Shown here piece by piece: positions 3,781 to 50,711 of a DNA stretch of 64,000 nucleotides. The stretch covers positions 59,788,368 through 59,852,367 of the forward strand of contig NC_068987.1 in assembly GCF_001194135.2 (NCBI RefSeq), written 5' to 3'. The notes beneath the pieces were generated by a model that made no database searches, was not told the origin of the DNA, and worked only from the letters and a program-made list of their open reading frames with translations. The stretch's first letter is position 1, and each line of letters begins with the position of its first letter. A program made the position numbers and the translations under genes. Origin of the DNA: Octopus bimaculoides (lineage: Eukaryota).

Positions 3781-5106
3781 AAGTATAAGAATACCAGTAG
3801 AAGAAAGATAAATAAGTAAAACGAAGGGAAGGATAGGTGAGGGGAGAGTAAAAACATATACGAAACAAAAATTTAGACAAGTAAATTACGCTGTGGAGAA
3901 AATGTAGAAAGATGCAATGAGAAATGAAATATCAAATAAAGGTGGTGAATGAAAAAGAAAAGCATCGAAGAGGATGTCACGTTTCGTGTTAACCTATTAA
4001 CAAGAAGAAATGAAAGAATCCAAGAAAGGAGGAGAAAAGAAATAAGTACGATGCGAAAGTAACATATCATACTGATACGATTTTTTGTACCTTCTGAAAA
4101 CATACATTTATATGTACGCGTGCGGATAAGTATACGCGCGCATGCGCACACACACACACATACACACACACTCACACACACAGATACATACATACACAGG
4201 ACGATAGAGAGATTGATAATCACTCAGATAACCGAACAAATGTACACAGATATATTTTTAGAGAAATATTTCTCTCTCTCTGTTTCCCTCCCTCTCTCCC
4301 CATCTTCCTCGCTCTCCTTGCATATATATATATATATATATANNNNNNNNNNNNNNNNNNNNNNNNNNNNNNNNNNNNNNNNNNNNNNNNNNNNNNNNNN
4401 NNNNNNNNNNNNNNNNNNNNNNNNNNNNNNNNNNNNNNNNNNNNNNNNNNNNNNNNNNNNNNNNNNNNNNNNNNNNNNNNNNNNNNNNNNNNNNNNNNNN
4501 NNNNNNNNNNNNNNNNNNNNNNNNNNNNNNNNNNNNNNNNNNNNNNNNNNNNNNNNNNNNNNNNNNNNNNNNNNNNNNNNNNNNNNNNNNNNNNNNNNNN
4601 NNNNNNNNNNNNNNNNNNNNNNNNNNNNNNNNNNNNNNNNNNNNNNNNNNNNNNNNNNNNNNNNNNNNNNNNNNNNNNNNNNNNNNNNNNNNNNNNNNNN
4701 NNNNNNNNNNNNNNNNNNNNNNNNNNNNNNNNNNNNNNNNNNNNNNNNNNNNNNNNNNNNNNNNNNNNNNNNNNNNNNNNNNNNNNNNNNNNNNNNNNNN
4801 NNNNNNNNNNNNNNNNNNNNNNNNNNNNNNNNNNNNNNNNNNNNNNNNNNNNNNNNNNNNNNNNNNNNNNNNNNNNNNNNNNNNNNNNNNNNNNNNNNNN
4901 NNNNNNNNNNNNNNNNNNNNNNNNNNNNNNNNNNNNNNNNNNNNNNNNNNNNNNNNNNNNNNNNNNNNNNNNNNNNNNNNNNNNNNNNNNNNNNNNNNNN
5001 NNNNNNNNNNNNNNNNNNNNNNNNNNNNNNNNNNNNNNNNNNNNNNNNNNNNNNNNNNNNNNNNNNNNNNNNNNNNNNNAATACCTCGTTGAGAGATTTA
5101 ACATTG

Positions 5107-5140
<34 letters not shown>

Positions 5141-5148
<8 letters not shown>

Positions 5149-5270
5149 TTATAAGGGTAGAAATTAATATTAATCAATTAAAACCAGTGGCTTAGCATAT
5201 TTAAAAAATCCGAAGATTAAAAATTGTGTTACATACAAAATTAAGAGGAATAACCACTAAAGTGGACACC
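5141..5270 (-). repeat. Diverged copy of the terminal segment of the 23815-24449 element
   Basis: Reverse complement aligns to 24305-24449 (ccact..agtgg..cctctt..tgtatgtaa..aatcttc..gct..gccactggtttta..cccttat..ttta) and ends at a (TA)n run. Confidence 0.75.
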
Positions 5271-7445
5271 TAATATGCTAAACATAGACGTCAAATTACC
5301 ATTTGGTGCAAAGTGTTCACGTCTATTTTGTAAAACACAGCTTTGTTTAGTTAACGGAGATTTTTGTGAATTCACGTAACCAAAACAACGAATCAATGTA
5401 TCAAGGGACGTTACTCTTGGGTAGCATCTTTTGGATATTTGTCTCCTCTGGATTTGTCTTTTGGGCAAATTGTTGTGTGGTCACCTTGTTTCAATTATTT
5501 TGTTTTTGTTCTGGGCGTATATACATTTGTGTGAACACACTCACACACATATATACATATCTTACCTTACTACAATTTTAATTTTGATAATAACCCTAGA
5601 CCATAAATTATCTCCACATATTTGTATAAGTGTAAGTCATATATCTAACTGAAATCATTGTAGGTCAACACTGTGCTTATGATGCCAATTAAGAGAGAAT
5701 TATCTGTTTACAAATCTTTAATGCCACCTTTATCTTCTAAATCCCTTTTCATGAAGGAAAAACGTCCAAAGCGTTAAAACAACTTTTCTCGTCAAAGCGT
5801 TAAGCTGATACCTTATTTGTAAGACTTTGTTCCTTCTGTGTTTTCTTTTTATCATTTATTCTATTCATGCCACAGCGTAAACGCTTATGCGGACTTCTAG
5901 ATTAAAACTCGGAACTTGAACGTTGAAGTCTAGGCTAAGTCATTGCCTGAATTACTGTGAACATTATTTTACTGCTCTTTGAAATCTATTTCATCTCTTA
6001 CGATTTCCTTACCTGTTTTCTTCTTTTTCTCTCTTCCATTCGCTTTTATAAATGGTATCCTATCTTACGATTGCTTCTCGCATTCATGGTGTATTTTATA
6101 TTACATCCGTTATTTTTTTTTCTTTGCATCACTGGCTATTCCTTTTATCGGTCCTTCCATGCTTCTTGCTTTTGATAAGGGACTCACGGTTCTAACGTCA
6201 AGCTGATTTATCTTTCCTTCCAAGTGAATCTAATTAATACCTTATTTGTCAAACAGTATTAAGGGGAAAAATAATCGTTAAAAAATAACAATTTATACCA
6301 GTGGCCAACATGCGTAAAAAGCGCCCAAGGACGTTATATATATATATATATATATATATGCATATGCGTACATTTATACATGTGTATGTGTCTAGGTGGG
6401 GTATTATCAGTTCGATAGAAATATAGGTTCTCTCTCTCAATAGCATATGTAACGCAGGCGGTTCGTATGATGACCAGCTACTGATAAACACGCAAGAAAT
6501 GAAATTGTTCATACGGAGTGGATACACAAAAATGCGCATGACATTGTATAACATTCAAAAATCATTGATTCAATGAAAGTGTGTATATTGTTACCAACCA
6601 TTACAGGATTCATTAAAAGTAACTTAACAAGATGGAAAACAAATGTGTTACTAAATAAAATATTCAAATTCTAAAATTATTAATTCTAAAACTGTTATAT
6701 TCCCAGCAGATTTAATTTCACTATTTTAGTTCTGTCTAATTCCTTTTTCTATTATGTGTAGCCTCAAACATTCAGGATGTGTGGGTGGAAGCATGATCTG
6801 TCACTTGCTGTATCAAGTTATATGTCAAGTTCGAGACAGCTTGAAACCTGTTTTATACTGTAAAATGTCATAGCTAAGACTTATGGAATATGTGTCTGGA
6901 AAATGCCGCAGGACTGCATTAGAAAACGATTAGGTTGACCAAATAGGCAAGAAGTGACTTCGAAATCAGTCATAATATTTTAATGAGTTTTGTATAAATA
7001 CATCATTCAGCTATTTGGGTATCGACGAAAGTGAGTAGACTCAGCTTGGCAGAATGAAAGAACAAATTCATAAGGGATATATCCGATGGCCTAGGATGAT
7101 ACTGAAATGTAAACTCAACTCGAAAAATAAGATAAAGAAATTGATTGTTTTTACCTTTTGCTGGATGAGGTTAGGGATCCAATGGGTAAAGTATAATATA
7201 CAAAAGTTAAAAAAATAACAAGACAAGCACAGGAAAACTGTTGACAAAATTTAGACTACATCTCTCAAAAACTGACATACAACATATGTATATCTCTAGA
7301 TAGAACGGGGGGAGAGACGTCTTTTGGAACCAGGGGTCGTTTATAAATCCAGTATAATTAAACTAAATATATCCTTTCTTTTTTTGCATTAAACAGTTGC
7401 TAAACATTAAAGTAAAGGGTTGCACTCCAAACAAAAGTTTTCTAC

Positions 7446-8038: not shown

Positions 8039-9056
8039 TATTGTTGTATTTGGGGATGGTGATGTTGCCAGTTTAGTCAATAAAACACACGCCCTATATA
8101 TTTGGTGTTAATTTGCTTCGGCTTTATTTTATTTTTTACATTAATCGTATTTCAGCCACATTTAGCCCACAAACAAACTGTAAAGCCAGAAATATAGTTT
8201 ATAATATAAGATGTACAGAGGGACGGTGCAGTAACAAGACAACGACGTACGGAGGGTAAACAGCACGGAGCATAGGAGAGTGGGTAAATGAACATTGTAG
8301 GGAACTTAAGGAAGAGAAGAGCTCATCGGTTCTGTATCAGCATGCCGAGCAAGAACACGGGGGCTCACTCAACAACATAGATGTTAAAATCGTGTTCACA
8401 CATAGAACAGATGCAACGCTTAGACAAATTACATAAGCTACACACATAATACACGATAAGCCTAGCCTGAATAGGAAACTGGAATGGAACACTAACACAC
8501 ACCCCTAACACACCACAACATATGACAGAATAAGATCCCCATAAACTGATAACAATATGAACAAAATATAATACAATACAAATGGAATTAAATAACTATA
8601 TACGTTACCAAAATTAAATTAAATTAAATTAAATTAAATTAAATACAAAAAAAAACAATAAAAAAATAATAAATAGATATAAACATATGAACAAAATAAA
8701 TAAAAACAAATTAAACGAACGTGTATAAACAAGGGATATAGATAATGCAGGCACTCCCCCACCATGTGCACTTACTAAGCATAGACACACATAGGGGTAT
8801 ACTCATGCGCAAATAAAGACATATATAACAGGAATACAAGATACAAAATGGCTGATCGTTAGTAAGGAAAGACACACAAATGAGAAGAAGGCAAAGGACC
8901 ACTCATGAGGTCACAGAAGTGTGACGAAAGAACTCTGACCGAAATACGATTAATGTAAAAAAAATTAAAAGAGCAGCGGCAAATTAATACCAAATATATA
9001 ATGCGTGTGTTTTATTAGCTAAACTGGCAATATGACCATCCTCAAATACAACAATA
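8039..9056 (+). mobile_element. 5'-truncated Penelope-like element: GIY-YIG endonuclease remnant flanked by ~115-bp inverted repeats
   Basis: 8179-8490 translates CKARNIVYNIRCTEGRCSNKTTTYGG*TARSIGEWVNEH...LRQIT*ATHIIHDKPSLNRKLEW, matching the PLE GIY-YIG pattern. 8039-8153 is the reverse complement of 8941-9056 at roughly 85% identity by eye. Confidence 0.85.
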
Positions 9057-9138
9057 TCTGTTTCAACACACGATTTCACATCAAGAATCTTGTAAAACGA
9101 ATATATAAACGTATATATATATATATGTATGTATGTAT

Positions 9139-9300
9139 TACGGGCTTCTTTCAGTTTCTGTCTATCAAATCCACTCGCAAGACTTTGGTCGGCCCGAGGC
9201 TATAGTAGAAGACACTTCCCCAAGGTGTCACGCAGTGGGACTGAACCCAGATCCATATGGTTGGTAAGCAAGCTACTTACCACACAGCCACTCCTGCGCC
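9139..9300 (-). mobile_element. tRNA-derived SINE (second family)
   Basis: Minus-strand head GGCGCAGGAGTGGCTGTGTGGTAAG...GGGTTCAGTCCCACTGCGTGACACCTTGGGGAAGTGTCTTCTACTATAG. Copies at 13631, 29720, 36771 and 48630. Confidence 0.85.
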
Positions 9301-21769: not shown

Positions 21770-22315
21770 ATCCTGGTGAAACAAAATCCCATCGTAACTG
21801 TTGAGGAAGTAGCAGAGTAGCTTGGATTTGGACATTCAACCCTTCATCGACACCTGCGTACCATCGAAAAAGTCAACAAATTGGGTCAATAGGTTCCTCA
21901 CAAACTTTCCGAGTCTAATCATGCGCAGAGAGTGAATGTGTGCCCTTCTTTGTAGTCACGTTTCACAAATGAACCATTCTTGGACCGAATAGCGATTGGT
22001 GACGAGAAATGGGTTCTCTATAAAAATGTCAAGCACCGAAGACAGTGGGTAGGGAAAAGTGAAACACCGGCTAAAGCAGGTCTTCACTGACGTAAGATGT
22101 TGTTATCTGTTTGGTGGTATTTGAAAGGTTTAGTCTACTTTGAACTTTTAATCTCAAACCAAACGATAACAAAGATTTACTGCGAGCAGCTTGAACGGCT
22201 TAAGTCAGCGCTAGAAGGACAACGACCATCTTCGGTTTCAAGACGAAAGGTGTTCTTCCATCAGGATAATGCTCGCCCACATACAGAGAAGATGACATTT
22301 CAAAGGCAGAAGCAG
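21770..22315 (+). mobile_element. Mariner transposase remnant
   Basis: Motifs Q*VPHKL (WVPHEL), IGDEKWVLY, KMLLSVWW and FHQDNARPH. Truncated before the third Asp; contains stops. Confidence 0.9.
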
Positions 22316-22589
22316 ATTTTTTTCTGATTCTTAGCTTATAACTAATATAAAGATAGCATGATTTATCACCCCAGTATTTCATAAGTAAATACCCAGAGCA
22401 ATCTTTATAGAAATCACCTTATAAGTAAATAATTAAATACAGGTTTGAATATTAAACTAATTTTGTGTAATCTTCTCTTTTTAATGTTGAAAATTGGTAT
22501 ATATACACAGTTTATATGTTCTGTTTATAATATCATTTTTAGTAATCTAAAATTTAATCTTCATACAACATAACAATATTGTGGTTTTC

Positions 22590-23790
22590 GGCCCTCCTGG
22601 GGCACAGTTGATTGTATCTATGCTGTTAGACAATTACAAGAAAAGTGCATTGAACAGAACCTTGCTATACACCATTGCTTTGTTGATTTGAGCAAAGCAT
22701 TCGATATTGTTAATCGAAATGCTCTGTGGCCAATTCTAAGGAAAATAAGTTGCCCAGAAAAATTTGTAAACATGATCAGACAAGATATGAAAGCAGGAGT
22801 TAACGTTGTTGGTAGGCTCTCTGAATCAATCTGCAATTGACTCGGCTTGTGATGATTTGAGCTTGACCGACAACTTCAATAAAAAAACAGTTTTAGTACA
22901 TCAACCTGCGTGTGGTGCTGCTTGTAACCCCACTAAAATTTTGTTAAGGGTAAGTTACTTGAGGTTGTCGATTCGTTCATCTGCTCTGTTCAAAATGATG
23001 GAAATCTTGATACAGAAATACAGCTGCGAATTCAAAGAGCAGCAAAAGCATTTGATGGCTTGGAGTCACGCGTTTAGTGCTAGCGACATATAAATAAGAA
23101 TACAAAGCTGGCTCTTTACTAATCATTTGTCTTACCATCTATGTTGTATTCCTGTGAAACTTGGACTTGTTACGAAAGGCATTTTAAATTGTTAGAACAA
23201 TTCCATCAAAAAGTGCCTTCATCGCATTTTAAAAATTCAATGGCGTTCTTTTACTCCAAACACAGATGTCCTTGCAACTGCAGGCATCACCTCAATTAAA
23301 GCTCAATTAAAGCTATGATTTTGAGGAACCAAATGAGATGGTGTTGCCATATTGTTCAAATAGAAGATGAACGCATGCCGAAACAGCTGTTTTATGGTGA
23401 GTTTGCAGAGGGAAAACGCTATCTGCGTAAACCTAAAAAAAGTTTAAGGACGACATAAGGACTACTATGAAGTCACTTGGACTGGATCCAGAAAACATAG
23501 AAAGCCTTGCTTCGGATCGAGTTGGATGGTGAACAAAAGTGTCGAGTGGAGTGAAAGCATTTGAAGAGGCCAGGATAACGTATGTAAGACTCAAAAGAGA
23601 TCTAAGGAAGAATGTAACGATCGAGAAGGTGAATGAAAATGACCTTTTTGTGTGCACAGTCTGTGACAGACCATGCTTGTCTTTTTTGCTGGGTTCAAAT
23701 CTCATCTGCGAACCCATGGAAAACGAACCTTCACCAACTATTCTACCTATATGTCTGTTCATACCTTTGAATGCAGTGTATACCAGAAGA
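22590..23790 (+). mobile_element. RTE-clade LINE remnant (partial RT, thumb, C-terminal C2H2-like finger)
   Basis: DCIYAVRQLQEKCIEQNLAIHHCFVDLSKAFDIVNRNALW; LYSCETWTCYERH; RMPKQLFYGE; CTVCDRPCLS/(frameshift)AGFKSHLRTH. Internal deletions and stops. Confidence 0.9.
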
Positions 23791-23814
23791 TTTGCAAATT
23801 CAACGGATTTAAAA

Positions 23815-24449
23815 TTTTCTGAATCTTCAGATTTTTCAATTTGCTAGGCCACTGGTTTTAAATTGATATTAATCAAATTAATATTCAATTTTTTCACCCT
23901 TATTATTTAAATTTAAATAACTATGTTCTATAACCATCAAAATTCACTGCAGAGAATTATTTTCTGCAGAATTATTTCCGGTATTTGGCGCGCCAAAACG
24001 AAGACGTTTGAAATATAACCCCAAATGTAATTGGTAGAACAATATACATGTTCAATCTCATGCGGACGTCTCGTGTATAGTTCTGCATATTATATTGCAA
24101 AGGACGATCATACTGAAGAGTTGCAGACAATTACGTAAGTAATTACGCAAGTAGTTAACAACGAAACCGGTCTATGATTAATTCTTTATATTTTGTATCT
24201 TTCCATTTGTCTTGCTCGCTTACGTTCTGATGTTTGGTGAATTTTCTTGAGACCAATCTTTTCTTAGTGGTCAGACCGTAGGTGGTTTTCTTGTAACAAA
24301 AGGGATATCCACTTAGTGGTCATCCCTCTTATATGTATGTAATATAATTTTTCTGAATCTTCAGATTTTTCAATTTGCTAGGCCACTGGTTTTAAATTGA
24401 TATTAATCAAATTAATATTAAGTTTCTTTCCCCTTATTATTTAAATTTA
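23815..24449 (+). mobile_element. Non-coding retrozyme / Penelope-pLTR-like unit with 101-bp terminal direct repeats
   Basis: 23815-23915 matches 24349-24449 with 5 mismatches (period 534 bp). Contains a hammerhead, has no ORF, and is followed by (TA)n. Confidence 0.7.
24107..24178 (+). ncRNA. Type I hammerhead ribozyme with canonical core
   Basis: Helix I ATCATA/TATGAT; CTGAAGA; helix II GTTG/CAAC with a 35-nt loop; GAA; palindromic helix III ACCGGT; GUC cleavage triplet (predicted cut after 24172). Confidence 0.85.
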
Positions 24450-25121
24450 TATATATATAAATATATACATACACAAATATGCACACAATTAAGTCATTCA
24501 GACAATTAGAAAGAATTTTTAACGATCCCAACAAACTTTCCATTTGAAGACATATTCTCCTCTTTGAACAATTTAATCAATGGACATTATTATTTAACTG
24601 AATTACAAATATATATGATATATTTAAGAGAAATACATTGGGATTCTTTAAAGCATAAATTGGCTTTGTCATTTTAGAAACAATAATAAACAGTTAATTC
24701 CGATTTAGTTTTTCCTTTATTCTCTTTAATCATTGTCCTGCAGCCATTCTGTGTCACGCGCATACTCACGCGCACAGACTGAGTACAGTTTGCGCACATG
24801 TGTGCTGAGCACACTGGTGCGATGTGAACAGGAACGTCTTACCCATGACACAACGTTCCTATCAGGTCCAGAAATTAAGTACACGGCTTATGATGGTGGG
24901 CTCAAAATTATAACAGCATCACGCGGTTTTATACATAAGAGAATTATACACACACATACGTATATGTGAATATGTATGTTGCATGTTTGAATGTATGTAT
25001 GTATGTATGTATGTATGTATGTATGTATCTATGTATCTATCTATCTATCTATCTATCTATCTGCCTGTCTGTCTATATCTATCTGTCTATCTGTCTGTCT
25101 ATCTACATGTATATGTATGTA

Positions 25122-25171
<50 letters not shown>

Positions 25172-25269
25172 AACATATATACATACATACACGCATGCAT
25201 ACATACATATATATTTCACTGCGCAATGCCTAATTTTATATCCTAATTCAGCTTCACTAATCCTTCAGC

Positions 25270-26440
25270 CTTGATTAGAATGGCGTCGCTAAACACCTTA
25301 CTACACTTACCTTTAGGAAGGCTCAGTATCCAAACCACTTCTGGCTGATCCGTCTACAGCACAATATAAAGTTTTCTGCTTTCTTTTTCACCCCGCCTTA
25401 TATACCACGTCTACTATCCTGACCTTCCGAACGTCCTATACGAGCGACGTTTTGCTCTATTCTCTCACAATTTCACATTCTTAACCGTTCTATCCCTCCC
25501 TACACAAACTTCCTTTTTTCATCTACCTACATAGTACCTTTCACACTATCTAAACTTCCTCTGCTGTTTTCAGTTTTTCTCTTATACCAAGGCACTGAAA
25601 CTTTACTTACTCTTTCCGACACCCTCCGATACGCTTCACTATTCAAATCCTGCATCCACTAGTTTTGCCTCTGGCAAGGCCTTTATTCCTATCCACCGTG
25701 CTTTCTCAGAAATGTTTCCCATTGTATTTTGGTTAAACAATTTCTGAATCTCAACGCTTTTTTTCTCTCTAGAGACCATCGTTTCATGTTCTTAAGTTCT
25801 TGCAGAGATCAGTTTCAAACTTGCACAGAGGTCGGACAATTCCTCCGCCGTGAGAAATTGCATGATTTCTACGTCAGCCATCCGCCTGAGCTCAACAACT
25901 CTAATGATTTTACTGACCTTGGTTGTCAAACATTTCACAAGGTGCCACCCTCAGGCCAATTCACAAGCCTTGGCATTGTCACAATATGTGCCCTTTCTAG
26001 ATAAAATGTTATGATTTTATTAACCTGTTTTGATGTTTCAATATTACTTAAACTGAATTCGGAAACTTGCCAACTCCGACACTGAAACAGTACTATGATG
26101 GAAACACAAGTCAGTGGCAAAGTAGTTACGACCATTTTCATATTTCATGAACGTCATTTCCTTTCCTTCAAACGAGATCATTTAGTCCATATCTCTGTAA
26201 TCTCTCTTCAGTGTAACACATGCGTTTACACCAAAAAAACTTACGAGATAATCACTTAAATTACACCAAATCGCCTATTGGCTGGCACTTCTGCTTGTTC
26301 ACCGATGCTGTTTCTTACCTCACAGTCTGTGATGTTATTTCACCCCTCTCGCTTCTCACTATCATAAAGAACAGTGTCTTATCTTTAGCCTCGGTTATCT
26401 CTCCCACACAGCTTTAAATAGGGTACTCATGTTCACATAA
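25270..26440 (+). mobile_element. Penelope-like element remnant: N-terminal domain joined to GIY-YIG C-terminus, RT missing
   Basis: LSRDHRF...EVGQFLRREKLHDFY...VPPSGQFTSL (PLE N-terminal pattern) and SPIGWHF...KEQCLIFSLGYLSHTALNRVLMFT* (EQ.LIF.LG.L.P.GLN pattern). Confidence 0.7.
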
Positions 26441-27047
26441 CTGCACACTACATCACCGTATTCTACACTCACATTGTTGTACCCCACCATAACATACCAC
26501 ACTTATACTTACTTATCATAGACCACATACTCTAATCCATTACATCTATAAAACCATATAAAGTTGGCATAACACACGCACACATATACACGTATACATA
26601 CAAACACACACACACACAAGAACACTAGCACAAATACTAACTTCACATGCGTATACGCAAGCAGACACCCTAATAACAAAACTATTACATGTTATATCAA
26701 CGCACATACCTTAAACAAACTACTCGCCCACATATATTTCAAAGTGCCATAAAACAACATAAATGCATATCACATACAAATAACCGTTATTAACCACGGA
26801 CTTATCCTATATAGCCATACCAACAAATAAACCCATTACATCACACATACGGACAAGTAAACCATTAGTTTTACACACGTTATGAATATTCATAAATAAA
26901 GTAATACATGTAAATGACTAACTTCACCCTCTTCTCCATTCCACTATGTAATTATTACCTACACAAATGCATAACTGATATATTGTTACAACTCACATTA
27001 CATTTCATAGGTTCACGTATTCACGTTTGTATGTCTTTGTAAATATT

Positions 27048-27130
<83 letters not shown>

Positions 27131-27823
27131 TGTGTGTGCATGTTTGTGGGTGTATCATAATAGAGAAATGATTTTTGCAAACAGATTTACAATCTTTATT
27201 TTGCTTGACACATATTAAGGCTATTTAACACCTACATAACTGACAAAATTGCATACTTAACTTCTCTATATACACATAAAACCGTTATATGAGCTTCCCC
27301 ACATTTCTCTTCTTCTCCTTCATTCTTTCTGTCTCTCTTTTTTCTCCTCTTTCTCTTACCTTCTTTCTTCCCCCTTCATTTTTTCGCTCTCGATCTCTCT
27401 CACTTTTTCTCTCATTTTCCACATGCTATCAGTATAACCCAGATTATGTCTCTACTTCCGGTCATTCTAAATCACTCTCCAACAACCTTTTTACACCTAT
27501 AATGTAAAGAGACGACGTAAATCCGTTTTTATTTCTTTTACACCGACCATTCTTCTCCCTTTTATCTCTCTTTCATAAAAGTGTGTAAATAGTAAAGTAA
27601 TACTTTCATTGAAAATTTGTTTTCATTGTACGCAAGCTTTAAATTTTATATTTTCTGGTTTTCCGCCATGTATTTTATTTGTTTAACTTCATATATTTTA
27701 TATTTGTTTCTTTACTCTTTGCCACATCATCGTTCACGTTCAACGTTGTGTTTTTATTCATCCAACCATCCATCCGTTCATCCATTAGTCCACCCTTTCA
27801 TGAATCAATCAATCAATCAATCA

Positions 27824-27879
<56 letters not shown>

Positions 27880-28089
27880 GTCTGTCTGTCTGTCTGTCTC
27901 TTTGCCCCTCTTTCTCTCTCCCTTCATTTCTCTCCCTCTCCGCCTGTCTCTGTCTCTTGTTCTTGGAATCCCTTCTCACAGGGTTATGTGGCAGAGTTTT
28001 GCCTCTGAGAGTCTTGCCTGAGAAAAATATATGTCACATTTATCAATGCATGTCCTCCTGCCATTATTAATTTAGATGAGAATAAGAAT

Positions 28090-28700
28090 CAGTCTTTGAA
28101 TCCAAGCTATCAGTCGTGTCATCTTCATAAGCTGCTTTTTCTTGATGATTTCAGTAGTAGATTGGATCAGAGAGTTATATGGTCTCATGTCATTGGTCAT
28201 TCATGTGGTGGATTCTTGTAACAGCAACGACCTCTTCCTTTTAAGGCATGTGCTGAACACAGTCTCTTTATAACCAACATCTTAGACGCATTTTCGCTGC
28301 AAACACTGGCGTTTCATTGGCCACATAATTGTGAAAAGGCATGATCTAAGTGATGAGCAGATAATAAGATCTCATGTGGGGATGGGCGCAGCACTGATCA
28401 TAAGTTCATTGTTAGTAAAATAAGTTGGTATTTAGAAGCAACAGGCGTCCTCAGGGCAAGCCACCATGAAGAAAGCTCACAAATCGTCAGAATGTCAAAG
28501 GTCATTTCTGAAATCCTTTCAGAGAACCTAAACAAAACATCTTTCAATATTGAAGACAGAGAGAACAGCTGGGCTTCTCTAAACAGACTTTGTGTACATT
28601 TGCAGTTGGCATCCATGGCCTTTCTAGAACACACTGCAAGGATTGGTTTTGACAAAAATAACAAAGAAATCCATTAAGAGACGAAAAAAACTAATCAAGA
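28090..28700 (+). mobile_element. RTE-clade LINE remnant (C-terminal half of the AP endonuclease and linker)
   Basis: Remnants of WRFIGHIIVKRHD, STDHKFIVSK, ENSWASL and GFDKNNKEI. Confidence 0.65.
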
Positions 28701-29119
28701 CTGTCAGCATTGATAAAAACTCACCGTGAAAGGTAGGTGCTCTTCATTATGTAAAATTGGTCTTCAGAAGGATAATAAGGCTTATGAAAAATAATTAGTG
28801 TAAAGAACGGGCTTAGGTGACGCAAACACATGCTGACACGATGCAGGGTAAATTTTGAAATCCATCATACAATCAATAGCCTTTACATACAAGATTTACT
28901 TAAATCATACTTCTCTAATCACAATATTGGATCACAGTGGGAAGACGGATTAACCATATTATACAATCACAATGGCTTCATACAATATGCCTTTAGAAAA
29001 TATATAATATCTGTTAATATGTAGATCTGAAATCTACAGTAGTCGCAAACCGAACAATAGCTGACTTAGCTTCGGCTCCAATAATTACAAGCCATTTCAG
29101 AAGGCCCCGAATGAGAAAG

Positions 29120-29153
<34 letters not shown>

Positions 29154-29227
29154 NNNNNNNNNNNNNNNNNNNNNNNNNNNNNNNNNNNNNNNNNNNNNNN
29201 NNNNNNNNNNNNNNNNNNNNNNNNNNN

Positions 29228-29291
<64 letters not shown>

Positions 29292-29463
29292 GTGTGTGTG
29301 TGTGTGTATTAATATATGTATTTAATAATGTTTATTACACTAAAGCTGCTTTTACTTCACATGTAAATTTTCTCTTAGGCATGCAATTTTCGGGCATATC
29401 AGCCCGTGATTTTACAAGCCATGAGCATATAAGTCGTGGACTGGCTAGGTGACCCAAGCGGGT

Positions 29464-29514
29464 GAGTGATGCTGACAAGCCACAAAAATGGCGAAACATC
29501 GATGTCCATCACTC
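29464..29514 (+). ncRNA. Type I hammerhead ribozyme with one core substitution (G8 to A)
   Basis: Helix I GAGTGATG/CATCACTC; CTGACAA (consensus CTGANGA); helix II GCCA-CAAAAA-TGGC; GAA; palindromic helix III ACATCGATGT; GUC triplet (C29506). Confidence 0.8.
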
Positions 29515-29719
29515 CCAACTGGGATTGAGGTGAGTTATCTCACATGTCCATAACTCTGACGTGTTTAACACCAGCGACATGAAAGTTATATACTCCACTA
29601 CGCCATTGCAGCAACCAGAAAATACACAAAGCATATAAATCAGTATATGTATGTATGTATGTGTTTATGCATGTACCCATGTATGCATATGTATATGTAT
29701 GTATACATACATGCTTATG

Positions 29720-29872
29720 CATGTGATTAGAAGCTTGGTTCTCAACAACAGGGTTCCGGGTTCAGTCCCACTGCGTGGCACCCTGAGCAAGTGTCTTCTA
29801 CTATAGAATCGGGGGGGGGACCAAAGGCTTGTGAGTGGATTTGGTACACGGAAACTGGAAAAGACTGTCGTA
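29720..29872 (+). mobile_element. SINE of the 9139 family
   Basis: ccgggttcagtcccactgcgtggcaccctgagcaagtgtcttctactatag...gagtggatttggta..cggaaactg. Confidence 0.85.
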
Positions 29873-30289
29873 TATATATGTATATATATATATAATTTAC
29901 AGAAAAGAACCAAAGTTCATGAACTCAGCCATGAAAATCGACAGTCACATATAGAAAAGTTTAATAAGTAAATACACTAAAAAGAATTATAATAAAATAC
30001 AATGTAATGATCATTAATATAATAAAACGACTACACGTGTTTCATAACCAAAGTTTCAAATAGAAAATGAAATAAAATAAAATCGATTAAAATAAATCGA
30101 TCGAAAATCAATTTTATTCAAAAATATAGCTTAGCTTCGGGTCAAAATACAACAACAATAATAATAAAATGAATGTATATATATCAACCAACAATAAATA
30201 ACAAATTAATTTATATAAAAATACTTATTATATCAAGAAGTAAAAGTACTTACATATCTGTGGAGATCTGCAATTAAAAATTCTGAAAT

Positions 30290-32217
30290 GCTTTAATTGT
30301 CAGAAAATAGAACATAAAAGCTCACATTGAAGAGGGAAGCAAAAAAAGTCGAAAAATATTCTAAAATAGTTTGCACAAAAGAAAGTCGTAACGACACCCC
30401 AAAAAGGAATGCGTATGTAAAAATAGACCACGCAAACGTGAAACTACAACTAGACATAGGTAGCGATATTACAATTATTGATACCGATACGTAGAAGAAA
30501 ACTGGGAAACCTACATTAAAGAAAACATCGAAAAGTGCGCGAGGCGTCGCAGGTAAAAGATTACATTTCTTAGGCAAAATGGTAAGCGACATTACATTTC
30601 GTGGTAAAACTTGTAAAGCAAAAGTGTTGGCGTCAAAAAATGGAATGAATTTGTTCGGTACTGACTGGATGGAGGTGTTTTATTTATGGGACTTCCCCAT
30701 ATGTCCGTTCCGTTAAAACATAAATGATTGTTCCTCTAGTAAGAATAAGGCGTCAGATGAATTGAAGAAAAAATTATAAAATGCTTTTCCTGAAGTGTTG
30801 TCGGATAAATTAGGTTTCTGTATTAAGACCGAGGCATGTTTCCGAATTAAGGGAAACGCAATACCAAAAACAGAACGATGCCTTTTGCTGCAATACAACG
30901 TGTCGATGAAGATTTAGACAGATTACAGAAAATTGAAGTCATTCAGAAAGTGAAATAAGCAAAATGGGAAGCTCCAACAGTGTGTATTAAAAAATCAAAG
31001 AATAACACAATCAGGGTGTGTGCCGATTTTTCCACTGGCTTGAATGAATGTCTGAAAACGTGTCACTATCCGCTACCTACTCCGGAGATATTTTTGTGGA
31101 GTTAAACGGGAGCAAAATATTTTTGAAACTGGACCTCACTGATGCGTACCTACAAATTAGAGTAGACGAGGAATGCTCAAAATACCTAACAGTGAATACG
31201 CATAAAGGACTATATAAATATAACAGATTAGCATTTGATCTAAAGGTCGCACCTGCAACTTTTTAATGGGTTACGGATACAATGTTAGCGGACTGAGAAA
31301 TCACAATTCCACACCTGGATGATATATTAATTAAAAGTAAATCTTGTGATCAGCATGTCGAGCATGTAAAATGTGTTTTTGAAAGAAATGAGAGATTACG
31401 GTTTCACACTGAGTGACAAAATATGTAAATTTTTCTTATCTAAAATTAAGTACTTAGGACAAATTATCGACAGGAATGGACGACGCCGGACCGTCTCGAG
31501 CAGACGCAATTAAAAATATGCCTCCTCCGACTAATATAACGACCTTACAAGCTTTTCTAGGTCCAGCGAATCATTATCAAAATTATATAGCAAATATGCA
31601 TGAATTGAGAGCTCCACTAAATAATTTGCTAAAAAAAGGATGTGAAGTGGAATTAGTCAAATATCGAAGAAAGAGAAGAAATACCGGTGAAAGTTTGTTA
31701 TGACTTGTTCGATGTTTCAACGCCAAAAGAGGTTGAAACTAGGCGGATCAAAATAGAAAACGTAAACAAACAGAACGACTAGAAATAGTCCCTAAGCGAA
31801 AGAAGACTTAAAAACTTCTGAGAAAATTGAAAGGGAGAAGTGATGATGAAAAGAAAAAACAAATTAAATTAAATAAACAATTTACACTTCCTACAGAAAT
31901 CAAATCTCAAAGGGGGAGATGTTATGGTGAGAATCATGACAACCCCTATGAGAATAGACGAGACGAACTCGTATAAATAGCAACGTGTTTGACAGAGCGA
32001 GAGATGAGAAATCGCAGGAAGATGAAAGATGTCGTTCGTGAGTCCGTGGAGTCGCAGGAAATTGTTCAGAAGTTGTTATAGCTCGTTGAGAGTTGTTTGG
32101 ATTGGTTACAGTTGTTGGCAGAGTATTTAGGAATACATCAAGTGGAGACTGTTGGTGTCTTCCCCGCTCTGTGGTAATATATCTCACACTGTATTAGTGC
32201 ACGACACTATCATGACA
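30290..32217 (+). mobile_element. Ty3/Gypsy (Mag / K02A2.6-like) LTR retrotransposon remnant: gag end, protease, RT, internal deletion, PPT, 3' LTR
   Basis: Protease VKLQLDIGSDITIID; RT IRVCADFSTGLNE, KLDLTDAYLQI, NRLAFDLKVAPATF, HLDDIL. PPT aaagggggaga at 31909-31919 is followed by TGTTATG. Confidence 0.9.
31920..32217 (+). repeat. 3' LTR of the Gypsy element
   Basis: Starts TGTTATG directly after the PPT and ends CATGACA (imperfect inverted termini); TATAAATA at about 31973. The right boundary could instead be 32188. Confidence 0.65.
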
Positions 32218-48770: not shown

Positions 48771-50711
48771 TCATTACTTTCGTTTACAATTAGATGGACT
48801 TGGCAATTTGTTCTTTATAATATCGATATATTAAGTACCAGATAAAGTGCTGAGATCGTTATAATCGACAAAAATCATTGAATTTGATACGCCAGTATGG
48901 CAGTAGTCCTAATATTAAAACAATGAGATTGGTTAAAGAAAATGAAAATTTGTCACTGAATTAATATCTCGATACACATCTCTTTTCCTTTGAATCGACC
49001 TATTTCCCTTCTTTCTTTTTCATCTGTCGCCCTTTTGAAGTAGATAAAATAATATATACCAATCTTTATTTAATCCACTATACGATTTCCTCCTTTAACA
49101 CAATTTGCGACGTGACTATTCAAACAAAAGACACTTATACAGATTAATGGCTTTCTAATAACTTGAGGCACCATCTCTTTCCAACAAGTCTGCATTTACA
49201 GTATCACTGTTCACTCACTAAAAACGTTTTAACCAATTTGTAGTTGTCTAAAAACTATTCAAGTGCCACTTGTAAGTGAGTAGAGTATTGTAAGAACTAT
49301 TTATATGACACTTGCAAGCGAATGGAATGTTTTGTTATTATAATTCAGGTAGTTTGTATCTTTTAACATTATTTCAAATGATCTGTTAGAAAACTGGGGT
49401 AATATGTTGAAACTAAGATTTACTAGACTGCATTAAAGTAGCGTCTAAGTTAGGTGAATAACATTTTTAGATTGATAGACGTCGAAACCTCTTGTGCTTT
49501 ATTTTTATTAAACCGAGAAAGGAAAGAGCCTGAGGATTCATAAATTAGGATTGATTCTAGAATTCCAAGAACACTTGTTTATTGATCAAGTTCGGGGGCG
49601 ATTTGAGAATCATGTCTAAAACTATTTAATTAGTTAGTTTATCTGCAAGTATAGCAGGAATCAGGAGAAATGTGTTGCTAATGAATAGTCAAATACAAGT
49701 GATATGCCTCTTTAAAATATTCTAGAATTACATGTAAATCACGATTTACATTGATTAGTCAAATTGCATTGCGCGCGCTCACACACACACACATACACGT
49801 GCACACACACGTGCACGCACACACACACACATACACATATACACACATATACACACATATACACACATACACACACACATACATACATACATACATACAT
49901 ACATACATGCATACATACATGCACATGAATATTTTATCAGTGTTAAAAATCCCCACGAAAAGCTCGCTATAAGCTTTAAATAAATTATACACTCTACATA
50001 ACCGTATATTGAGTTCTTAATTGAACTATGGTCTTTCTCGGTCTGCAAATGGTATAACCCATATAAATAGATATTTACACACATATCTCTCAGTATACAC
50101 ACACACACATATACACGCGCGCACGCACACACACACGCATTAATATATATATATAAAAGAGATAAATTATTCTGGCGTGAGTGATAGACCCTTGATGAAA
50201 TTGCAATGACTAGAATGCATAATTGCATACAAAACAATGTGAAGTCGCTGCAGTCGAAACATATGTAGGTCAGATGTACATGGTGCGGAAGACTTTTAAA
50301 TAAAGAAGTTTTCGCCTCGATGTCANNNNNNNNNNNNNNNNNNNNNNNNNNNNNNNNNNNNNNNNNNNNNNNNNNNNNNNNNNNNNNNNNNNNNNNNNNN
50401 NNNNNNNNNNNNNNNNNNNNNNNNNNNNNNNNNNNNNNNNNNNNNNNNNNNNNNNNNNNNNNNNNNNNNNNNNNNNNNNNNNNNNNNNNNNNNNNNNNNN
50501 NNNNNNNNNNNNNNNNNNNNNNNNNNNNNNNNNNNNNNNNNNNNNNNNNNNNNNNNNNNNNNNNNNNNNNNNNNNNNNNNNNNNNNNNNNNNNNNNNNNN
50601 NNNNNNNNNNNNNNNNNNNNNNNNNNNNNNNNNNNNNNNNNNNNNNNNNNNNNNNNNNNNNNNNNNNNNNNNNNNNNNNNNNNNNNNNNNNNNNNNNNNN
50701 NNNNNNNNNNN

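What the first reader, a model, noticed from the sequence alone, without database searches (positions are those of the whole stretch)
23815..24449. Retrozyme-like unit: intact hammerhead inside a 534-bp monomer with 101-bp terminal redundancy
Seen in the sequence: direct repeats at 23815-23915 and 24349-24449 (5 mismatches), no ORF, and a hammerhead with every conserved core base (helix I ATCATA/TATGAT, CTGAAGA, helix II GTTG/CAAC, GAA, ACCGGT, GUC). Established knowledge: palindromic helix III is characteristic of Penelope-associated and retrozyme hammerheads that cleave as dimers, and metazoan retrozymes make small circular RNAs. Inference: a 1.2-mer insertion is what reverse transcription past one turn of a ~534-nt circle would leave, and PLE remnants nearby (8039, 25270) suggest a mobilising partner. 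The enlarged loop 2 contains a 12-bp tandem duplication (aattacgtaagt/aattacgcaagt) that can itself form a hairpin. I do not recall such a family being characterised in cephalopods but could not check this.
Basis: partly seen in the sequence, partly recalled or inferred. Interest (0 to 1): 0.85.

Follow-up and report, generated by a model that had tools for sequence, protein, structure and literature searches.

The report
Hammerhead-bearing short retroposon in octopus-like DNA
A roughly 534-bp non-coding mobile element carrying one sequence-intact self-cleaving hammerhead RNA motif sits here as a 1.2-unit head-to-tail copy; it looks like a cephalopod member of the already described retrozyme / Penelope-like family, not a new kind of system.

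Summary
The 101-nt direct repeats lie at 23815-23915 and 24349-24449 (5 mismatches, period 534). There is no ORF or Pfam signal. A type I hammerhead with every core base spans 24107-24178, with cleavage predicted after C24172. A generic hammerhead descriptor hits only this site in the window and 0.004 times per shuffled window.

The unit is a retroposon, not a local duplication. A third, 5'-truncated copy (about 5135-5276, minus strand, 78% identical) shares the same 3' end and also stops at a (TA)n tract. The hammerhead lies on the strand of the inferred RNA template. The LINE directly upstream does not own the unit: Octopus vulgaris copies of that LINE read on past the junction.

A short truncated copy abutting a full copy, 5' truncation and a (TA)n 3' junction are the published insertion pattern of Penelope-like elements and their non-autonomous derivatives, the animal non-LTR retrozymes.

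This locus has only one hammerhead, whose helix III needs a partner RNA, so it cannot release a monomer by itself. I could not retrieve other genomic copies, so retrozyme versus fragment of a coding Penelope-like element stays open. It is a new member of a known kind, of modest interest.

The parts
23815..23915 (+). R1: upstream 5'-truncated partial copy holding the last 101 nt of the unit. It abuts the 5' end of the full unit directly, in the manner of a pseudo-LTR.
   Evidence: It is identical to R2 except for 5 clustered mismatches. Unlike R2 and R3, it lacks the 38-50 nt of unit sequence that precede the repeat in those copies.
23916..24348 (+). Body of the full-length unit. It is non-coding and contains several perfect hairpins, for example CTGCAGAGAA/TTCTCTGCAG-type stems and GGCGCGCC.
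   Evidence: No ORF longer than 54 codons and no Pfam hit.
24107..24178 (+). Type I hammerhead motif. Helix I has 6 bp plus a possible G-U pair. The core is CUGAAGA...GAAA. Helix II has 4 bp and is extended by a 35-nt insert. Helix III is the palindrome ACCGGU.
24172..24173 (+). Predicted self-cleavage site, between C17 (24172) and U1.1 (24173).
   Evidence: Follows from hammerhead numbering applied to the motif. Cleavage itself is not testable here.
24124..24158 (+). Enlarged loop 2 / helix II extension, with a 12-nt tandem duplication at 24129-24140 and 24141-24152 (1 mismatch). It is predicted to form its own hairpin.
24349..24449 (+). R2: the native 3' terminal 101 nt of the full unit.
24450..24490 (.). 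Imperfect (TA)n/(CA)n microsatellite at the 3' junction. It is probably the target or priming site rather than part of the unit.
   Evidence: The same kind of tract follows the third copy. It is absent between R1 and the body.
5135..5276 (-). R3: an older, independent 5'-truncated copy of the unit's 3' end. It corresponds to unit positions about 24298-24449 and ends at (TA)n.
   Evidence: BLAST gives 78% identity over 167 nt, E=1e-28. nhmmer gives E=1.5e-7. Alignment.

Best explanation
This is a copy of a short (about 534 nt), non-coding, hammerhead-bearing retroposon of the Penelope-like / animal non-LTR retrozyme type, in an octopus-like genome.

Inferred life cycle, taken from the published model and not shown here:
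1. Multimeric or tandem transcripts of the family are cut by hammerheads. These pair through their palindromic helix III (ACCGGU with ACCGGU) and so act as dimers.
2. Monomers may be circularised by a host RNA ligase.
3. A reverse transcriptase supplied in trans, most likely from a Penelope-like element, primes at an AT-rich or (TA)n nick and copies the RNA for more than one unit length.
4. The result is a full unit preceded by a 101-nt partial unit.

Shown here: the motif, the repeat geometry, the 5'-truncated second copy, the shared 3' end at (TA)n, the sense orientation of the ribozyme, the absence of coding capacity, and above-background predicted RNA stability.

This particular locus carries a single hammerhead. 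It is therefore a dead-end 'monomer derivative', not a source of circular RNA.
For: - Exact repeat and motif anatomy.
- The hammerhead is unlikely by chance: 0.004 expected per window, the only descriptor hit in the window, and a full-length match to Rfam Hammerhead_1.
- It is a dispersed family with a fixed 3' end and a variable 5' end. The third copy at 5135-5276(-) matches body end plus R and also ends in (TA)n.
- The hammerhead lies on the strand of the RNA template inferred from the polarity of truncation.
- The adjacent LINE is not the owner. O. vulgaris copies of it continue for at least 150 nt of zinc-finger ORF beyond the point equal to window 23807, with no similarity to R.
- No coding remnant in six frames.
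- No tRNA-like head.
- Predicted RNA stability: linear monomer z=-4.2 and circular monomer z=-4.0. Nine control segments from the window range from -3.7 to +2.4, mean -0.9.
- Literature fit. Partial tandems, 5' truncation and (TA)n targets are typical of Penelope-like elements and their non-autonomous derivatives (PMC8557442). Canonical metazoan type I hammerheads have a 6-bp helix I, a 4-bp helix II and a 1-2 bp helix III with a palindromic loop (PMC4209133). Retrozyme consensus lengths run from 51 to 972 bp and monomer derivatives are common (bioRxiv 10.64898/2026.07.22.740005). Penelope-like elements are abundant in O. vulgaris (PMC13282606).
Against: - Only one hammerhead and 1.19 units at this locus, with no tandem array.
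- The Rfam score is below the gathering threshold: 23.4 against 34.
- Loop 2 carries a 35-nt insert. Loop-loop tertiary contacts cannot be assessed.
- Only three pieces of the family were seen, all inside this window.
- No other copy could be retrieved: metagenome, viral and prokaryotic genome pattern scans and a protein-level search were all empty.
- No Penelope-like element sharing the unit's terminus is present in the window.
- No target-site duplication was found.
- The clustered R1/R2 mismatches are unexplained.
- The predicted minimum-free-energy fold of the isolated motif sequesters part of the core.
Confidence: 0.55

Rival explanations
1. The unit is a terminal fragment (3' UTR or pseudo-LTR region) or an internally deleted derivative of an autonomous, hammerhead-bearing Penelope-like element. 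The 534 bp would be a 5'-truncated element end preceded by a second truncated copy, not a separate non-autonomous family.
For: The partial-tandem, 5'-truncation and (TA)n anatomy is equally that of coding Penelope-like elements, and hammerheads are typical of their terminal repeats (PMC8557442, PMC4209133). Penelope-like elements are abundant in octopus (PMC13282606). A probable GIY-YIG remnant lies in the same window at 8191-8433.
Against: No RT or GIY-YIG trace in the unit in six frames. The remnant at 8191-8433 shares no sequence with the unit. The hammerhead has the canonical architecture (6-bp helix I, 4-bp helix II, no extra base between A9 and G10.1). That differs from the minimal variant with long helix II and short helix I described for metazoan Penelope-like elements (PMC4209133).
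Confidence: 0.2
2. The unit is a SINE-like element mobilised by a LINE reverse transcriptase. The hammerhead would be a passenger or processing motif, (TA)n would be its microsatellite-type 3' tail, and the 1.2-mer would arise by template switching. The co-oriented LINE fragment upstream could be part of the same chimeric cDNA.
For: There is a fixed 3' end followed by (TA)n in two independent copies, with no (TA)n on the 5' side. 5' truncation is present. A co-oriented LINE fragment ends exactly at the junction, at 23807. Retrozymes have been likened to SINEs (PMC7761336).
Against: No tRNA-like head: ARAGORN found nothing over 23000-30500, and no small-RNA gene family was among the Rfam matches listed for the unit. 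R has no similarity to the 3' part of the adjacent LINE family. No target-site duplication was found. The (TA)n tract next to the nearly identical R1/R2 pair is already decayed, which suggests pre-existing target DNA rather than a new tail.
Confidence: 0.1
3. The hammerhead-like motif is a fortuitous or decayed match with no catalytic role, lying inside an ordinary low-copy repeat.
For: The Rfam score is below the gathering threshold, and the motif was not listed in the whole-window search at E up to 5. It is a single motif with a large insertion in loop 2. The minimum-free-energy fold does not show the active conformation. At 0.004 per 64 kb, a genome of a few Gb would hold on the order of a hundred chance descriptor hits.
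Against: All 13 core positions, G10.1-C11.1, A15.1-U16.1 and both helices are intact, and helix III is palindromic, which the descriptor did not require. The motif is on the sense strand of a retroposon. A second palindromic-helix-III hammerhead of a different family lies 5 kb away. This shows the genome carries such elements.
Confidence: 0.1

Closest known systems
Animal non-LTR retrozymes (Cervera and de la Pena 2020, PMC7229834; Li, Clavereau and Pollet 2026, bioRxiv 10.64898/2026.07.22.740005)
   Same: Both are non-coding, low-GC short units carrying a type I hammerhead with a 6-bp helix I, a 4-bp helix II and a weak palindromic helix III that implies dimer-dependent cleavage. The insertion is longer than one unit. 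The predicted RNA is stable. The unit length of 534 bp lies within the reported range of 51-972 bp. Monomer derivatives are described as common.
   Different: This is not a tandem array: 1.19 units and one ribozyme. Loop 2 carries a 35-nt hairpin insert with a 12-nt duplication. Two copies share a fixed 3' end at (TA)n. Neither cited paper samples a cephalopod. No expression or circular RNA data are available.
Penelope-like elements and their pseudo-LTRs, including the non-autonomous derivatives described for Chlamys (PMC8557442; PMC4209133)
   Same: A full copy preceded by a truncated copy forms direct terminal repeats. 5' truncation is frequent. The insertion is next to a (TA)n microsatellite. 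A hammerhead motif is associated with the element.
   Different: There is no RT/GIY-YIG ORF. The hammerhead lies outside the duplicated part. Its architecture is canonical rather than the minimal Penelope-type. No 30-40 bp 'tail' extension and no inverted partner copy were seen.
Newt/salamander satellite 2 and Schistosoma Sm-alpha hammerhead repeats
   Same: Short repeated non-coding elements with type I hammerheads. The amphibian ones have a 1-bp helix III with a palindromic tetraloop and cleave as dimers (PMC7229834).
   Different: Those occur as long tandem arrays or in very high copy number. The sequence here is unrelated, and copy number is unknown.

Membership tests
Hammerhead ribozyme, type I (Rfam RF00163 / clan CL00010) | Conserved core: C3 U4 G5 A6 N7 G8 A9, G12 A13 A14, the A15.1-U16.1 pair, and H17 at the cleavage site | tested here: met
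   CUGAAGA at 24113-24119, GAAA at 24163-24166, U 24171 and C 24172.
Hammerhead ribozyme, type I (Rfam RF00163 / clan CL00010) | Helices I and II flank the core, with helix I open (type I topology) | tested here: met
   Helix I is 6 bp, AUCAUA/UAUGAU. Helix II is 4 bp, GUUG/CAAC, with a G10.1-C11.1 pair.
Hammerhead ribozyme, type I (Rfam RF00163 / clan CL00010) | A stable helix III within one molecule | tested here: not met
   ACCGGU leaves at most 1 bp plus a CCGG loop within one molecule. As an intermolecular duplex it gives 6 bp and -9.7 kcal/mol. This is the dimer-type helix III known in metazoan hammerheads (PMC4209133).
Hammerhead ribozyme, type I (Rfam RF00163 / clan CL00010) | Score at or above Rfam's gathering threshold | tested here: not met
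   23.4 bits against 34. The loss comes mainly from the 35-nt loop 2 insert and the 2-nt loop 3.
Hammerhead ribozyme, type I (Rfam RF00163 / clan CL00010) | Self-cleavage activity | not testable with these tools
   Needs in vitro transcription of monomer and dimer constructs.
Animal non-LTR retrozyme | Head-to-tail tandem of at least 2 units, each with a hammerhead, so that a monomer can be excised | tested here: not met
   1.19 units and one hammerhead. This fits only the 'monomer derivative' category of the 2026 preprint.
Animal non-LTR retrozyme | Non-coding, low GC, unit length of a few hundred nt | tested here: met
   33% GC and 534 nt. No ORF or Pfam hit.
Animal non-LTR retrozyme | Multicopy dispersed family in the genome | tested here: inconclusive
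   Two loci within 64 kb. No genome-wide search was possible, and external scans were empty.
Animal non-LTR retrozyme | Expressed as linear and circular monomeric RNA | not testable with these tools
   No transcriptome access.
Penelope-like element (autonomous) | ORF encoding a reverse transcriptase and a GIY-YIG endonuclease | tested here: not met
   No ORF and no Pfam signal in six frames.
Penelope-like insertion pattern (autonomous or non-autonomous) | Partial tandem (full copy preceded by a truncated copy) together with frequent 5' truncation | tested here: met
   R1 plus the full unit. The 5'-truncated copy R3.
Penelope-like insertion pattern (autonomous or non-autonomous) | Sequence similarity of the 3' end to an autonomous partner | tested here: inconclusive
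   No similar sequence elsewhere in the window or in 33 kb of DNA fetched from an O. vulgaris chromosome and two unidentified sequencing-run contigs. The genome itself is not searchable here.
SINE (LINE-mobilised) | Head derived from a small RNA gene, and a 3' tail shared with a partner LINE | tested here: not met
   ARAGORN found nothing. Rfam found no small-RNA family above noise in the unit. There is no similarity to the adjacent LINE family's 3' part. Other LINE families were not tested.

The most novel reading that the evidence does not exclude
The unit represents a currently or recently active cephalopod retrozyme family. R1 and R2 are identical outside one 11-nt patch, so this insertion is young, whereas copy R3 is 22% diverged. 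The family would produce circular RNAs of about 534 nt through a dimer-dependent hammerhead with an unusually enlarged, internally duplicated helix II. This would extend ribozyme-made circular RNAs to cephalopods.
Probability: 0.2. Interest if true: 0.5.

Novelty: new member of a known kind. Interest (0 to 1): 0.3.

Why it matters
If the family is confirmed genome-wide, it would add cephalopods to the animal groups carrying hammerhead retroposons. It would also give a candidate source of ribozyme-processed circular RNA in a lineage whose transposon activity is under active study. None of the papers I found and read describes hammerheads or retrozymes in cephalopods. The concept, mechanism and architecture are already published for corals, mussels, amphibians and other vertebrates, so this is an extension rather than a new principle.

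Tried and rejected
1. LINE 3' UTR hypothesis. The first repeat starts exactly where a degraded LINE ORF seems to stop (TGA at about 23820). I rejected this because O. vulgaris copies of the same LINE read through that point into two more zinc fingers, with no similarity to the repeat. The LINE remainder is nowhere else in the window.

2. Retrieval of other copies all failed:
- hammerhead pattern in metagenome, viral and prokaryotic genome collections;
- repeat-core pattern in metagenomes;
- protein search with the unit's longest stop-free frame, hoping for spurious gene calls on octopus contigs;
- BLAST against the DNA fetched from O. vulgaris (29.5 kb) and from two unidentified sequencing-run contigs.
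These are nulls about the tools' reach, not about copy number.

3. Search for octopus Penelope-like proteins with the window's GIY-YIG-like remnant. The word-indexed search found nothing, Pfam nothing and PDB nothing. Exhaustive HMMER found 20 short relatives, three of them with sub-threshold Pfam GIY-YIG hits. The assignment as a Penelope-like remnant therefore remains probable only.

4. tRNA-like SINE head: none.

5. Target-site duplication: none of 8 nt or more at either copy.

6. Local tandem duplication as the origin of the repeat: rejected because of the dispersed third copy with the same 3' end.

Full report
**Observation**

- Window 23815-23915 and 24349-24449 are 101-nt direct repeats with exactly five mismatches. 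The period is 534 nt and BLAST gives E=2.7e-42.
- Between them, 24107-24178 (+) has all the elements of a type I hammerhead:
  - helix I, AUCAUA/UAUGAU;
  - core, CUGAAGA;
  - helix II, GUUG/CAAC with a G10.1-C11.1 pair;
  - a 35-nt loop 2 holding the 12-nt tandem duplication AATTACGTAAGT/AATTACGCAAGT;
  - GAAA, then CCGG, then U and C17 at 24172.
- Rfam's Hammerhead_1 model aligns end to end, but at 23.4 bits, under its gathering score of 34. The motif therefore does not appear in either whole-window search, at gathering thresholds or at E up to 5.
- A generic descriptor that I wrote finds only this site in the window. It finds 0.004 sites per dinucleotide-shuffled window over 1000 shuffles. 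The descriptor did not require the palindromic helix III.
- The unit has no ORF above 54 codons and no Pfam family at or above threshold in six frames.

**What the unit is**

1. The unit is a dispersed repeat with a fixed 3' end.
   - A third copy at about 5135-5276 on the minus strand is 78% identical (E=1e-28; nhmmer).
   - It aligns to the last 150 nt or so of the unit. That covers the end of the body plus the repeat, not the repeat alone.
   - Like the full copy, it stops at a (TA)n tract.
   - So 24349-24449 (R2) is the native 3' end, 23815-23915 (R1) is a 5'-truncated partial copy joined directly to the 5' end of a full copy, and the family shows the 5' truncation typical of target-primed reverse transcription.

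2. The polarity inferred from truncation is the strand that carries the hammerhead. The ribozyme would therefore be present in the RNA intermediate.

3. The degraded LINE immediately upstream is a neighbour, not the owner.
   - It spans 22574-23807 and is frameshifted, with RT and C2H2 fingers.
   - Its apparent stop codon falls inside R1. I therefore tested whether the unit is that LINE's 3' UTR.
   - It is not. Copies of the same LINE family in an Octopus vulgaris chromosome (locus L001) match the window at 83-84% up to position 23807. They then continue into at least 150 nt more of zinc-finger ORF that is unrelated to R1.
   - The missing LINE end is nowhere else in the window.
   - The best LINE protein matches (67-69% identity) come from O. 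vulgaris, so the window is from an octopus-like cephalopod.

**Fit to known insertion patterns**

- A full copy preceded by a truncated copy, frequent 5' truncation and insertion at (TA)n microsatellites are the published hallmarks of Penelope-like elements. The paper reports partial tandems for non-autonomous relatives as well (PMC8557442).
- Hammerheads are associated with the terminal repeats of these elements (PMC4209133).
- Animal non-LTR retrozymes are short non-coding tandem units with type I hammerheads (PMC7229834). A 2026 preprint argues they are non-autonomous derivatives of Penelope-like elements. It reports consensus lengths of 51-972 bp and many monomer derivatives (bioRxiv 10.64898/2026.07.22.740005).
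- The hammerhead here has the canonical metazoan architecture: a 6-bp helix I, a 4-bp helix II, no extra base after A9, and a 1-2 bp helix III with a palindromic loop. It does not have the minimal Penelope-type architecture (PMC4209133).
- Helix III cannot close within one molecule. As an intermolecular ACCGGU duplex it is worth about -9.7 kcal/mol, consistent with dimer-dependent cleavage.
- The monomer is predicted to be unusually stable. The linear form has z=-4.2 and the circular form z=-4.0 with 0 of 200 shuffles as stable. Nine control segments of the same window have a mean z of -0.9 and a minimum of -3.7. This is supportive but not decisive.

- The locus has 1.19 units and one ribozyme, because the duplicated part excludes the hammerhead. 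It cannot excise a monomer or form a circle from its own transcript. It fails the tandem criterion for retrozyme membership.
- A 1.2-mer is not specific for a circular template. Partial tandems are generic for Penelope-type insertion.
- Two independent copies share the same 3' end. This requires a defined RNA end or a preferred AU-rich priming site.
- All five R1/R2 differences lie within 11 nt (23886-23896), with none in the other 99 aligned positions or so. Random placement gives p of about 1.7e-4.
  - The duplication is therefore young.
  - The patch does not look like neutral decay after one pass around one template.
  - The third copy is a mosaic of both variants in that patch.
  - This remains unexplained.
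- No target-site duplication was found.
- The 'nearby Penelope remnants' give weak support. The stretch at 8191-8433 looks like a Penelope-type GIY-YIG endonuclease by eye, and some of its relatives have sub-threshold GIY-YIG hits. It gives nothing in Pfam or PDB itself, lies 15.6 kb away and shares no sequence with the unit.
- I saw no recognisable coding remnant by eye in six-frame translations around 25270; no domain search was run on that stretch.

**External copies**

I could not obtain other genomic copies.
- Pattern scans of metagenome, viral and prokaryotic collections were empty.
- A protein-level search was empty.
- BLAST against 33 kb of fetched DNA (29.5 kb of O. vulgaris and two unidentified sequencing-run contigs) was empty.
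- The tools hold no searchable cephalopod genome, so these results say nothing about copy number.

**Verdict**

The feature is real: a hammerhead-bearing, non-coding retroposon copy of the Penelope-like / retrozyme kind. The locus itself is most likely a dead-end monomer derivative (confidence 0.55).

Rivals:
- a fragment of a coding Penelope-like element (0.2);
- a LINE-mobilised SINE-like element (0.1);
- a fortuitous or dead motif in an ordinary repeat (0.1).

None of the papers I found and read describes hammerheads or retrozymes in cephalopods. The kind of element and its proposed mechanism are already known, so this is a new member of a known kind. Interest is about 0.3.

Noticed in passing
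window 29454-29529 (+): A second, unrelated type I hammerhead-like motif (Rfam Hammerhead_HH9, 34.3 bits against a gathering score of 52, E=7e-5 for the whole window). Helix I is GAGUGAUG/CAUCACUC, helix II is GCCA/UGGC, and helix III is the 10-nt palindrome ACAUCGAUGU. The core reads CUGACAA, with A at position 8 (29477) where G is conserved, so it is probably inactive. It sits in a unit of about 330 bp between a (GT)n and a (TATG)n tract.
   Followed up: partly
window 23886-23896 vs 24420-24430: All five differences between the two 101-nt repeat copies cluster within 11 nt (p about 1.7e-4 for random placement). The third copy is a mosaic of both variants there. This may reflect two template RNAs, RT slippage in a T-run, or gene conversion.
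   Followed up: partly
window 22574-23807 (+): A degraded, frameshifted LINE fragment (RT with an internal deletion, plus C-terminal C2H2 fingers). It is 83-84% identical to copies on an O. vulgaris chromosome. It is cut off at its 3' side exactly where the hammerhead unit begins, and its remainder is absent from the window. It is co-oriented with the unit, so a chimeric cDNA made by template switching is conceivable.
   Followed up: partly
window 21794-22303 (+): A mariner/Tc1-type transposase remnant with in-frame stops (Pfam Transposase_1, E=2.9e-18).
   Followed up: yes
window 8040-8500 (+) and about 8987-9199 (-): A probable Penelope-type GIY-YIG endonuclease remnant at 8191-8433. It starts next to a (CA)n tract. 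About 70 nt of inverted duplicate sequence (peptide ...SL(V/A)NKTHALYIW...) lie on either side, resembling the inverted truncated partner copies described for Penelope-like elements. The remnant itself gives no Pfam or PDB hit, and support from relatives is sub-threshold only.
   Followed up: partly
window 29735-29870 (+): A sequence that resembles, from memory, the abundant tRNA-derived SINE of octopus genomes. It ends in a (TA)/(TATG) tract. ARAGORN did not call a tRNA there.
   Followed up: no
window, e.g. 5050-5079, about 21300, 29155-29227, about 50300-50700: Runs of N of varying length lie inside or next to microsatellites. The assembly has gaps at simple repeats, so tandem arrays of short elements could be collapsed or missing in this assembly.
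   Followed up: no
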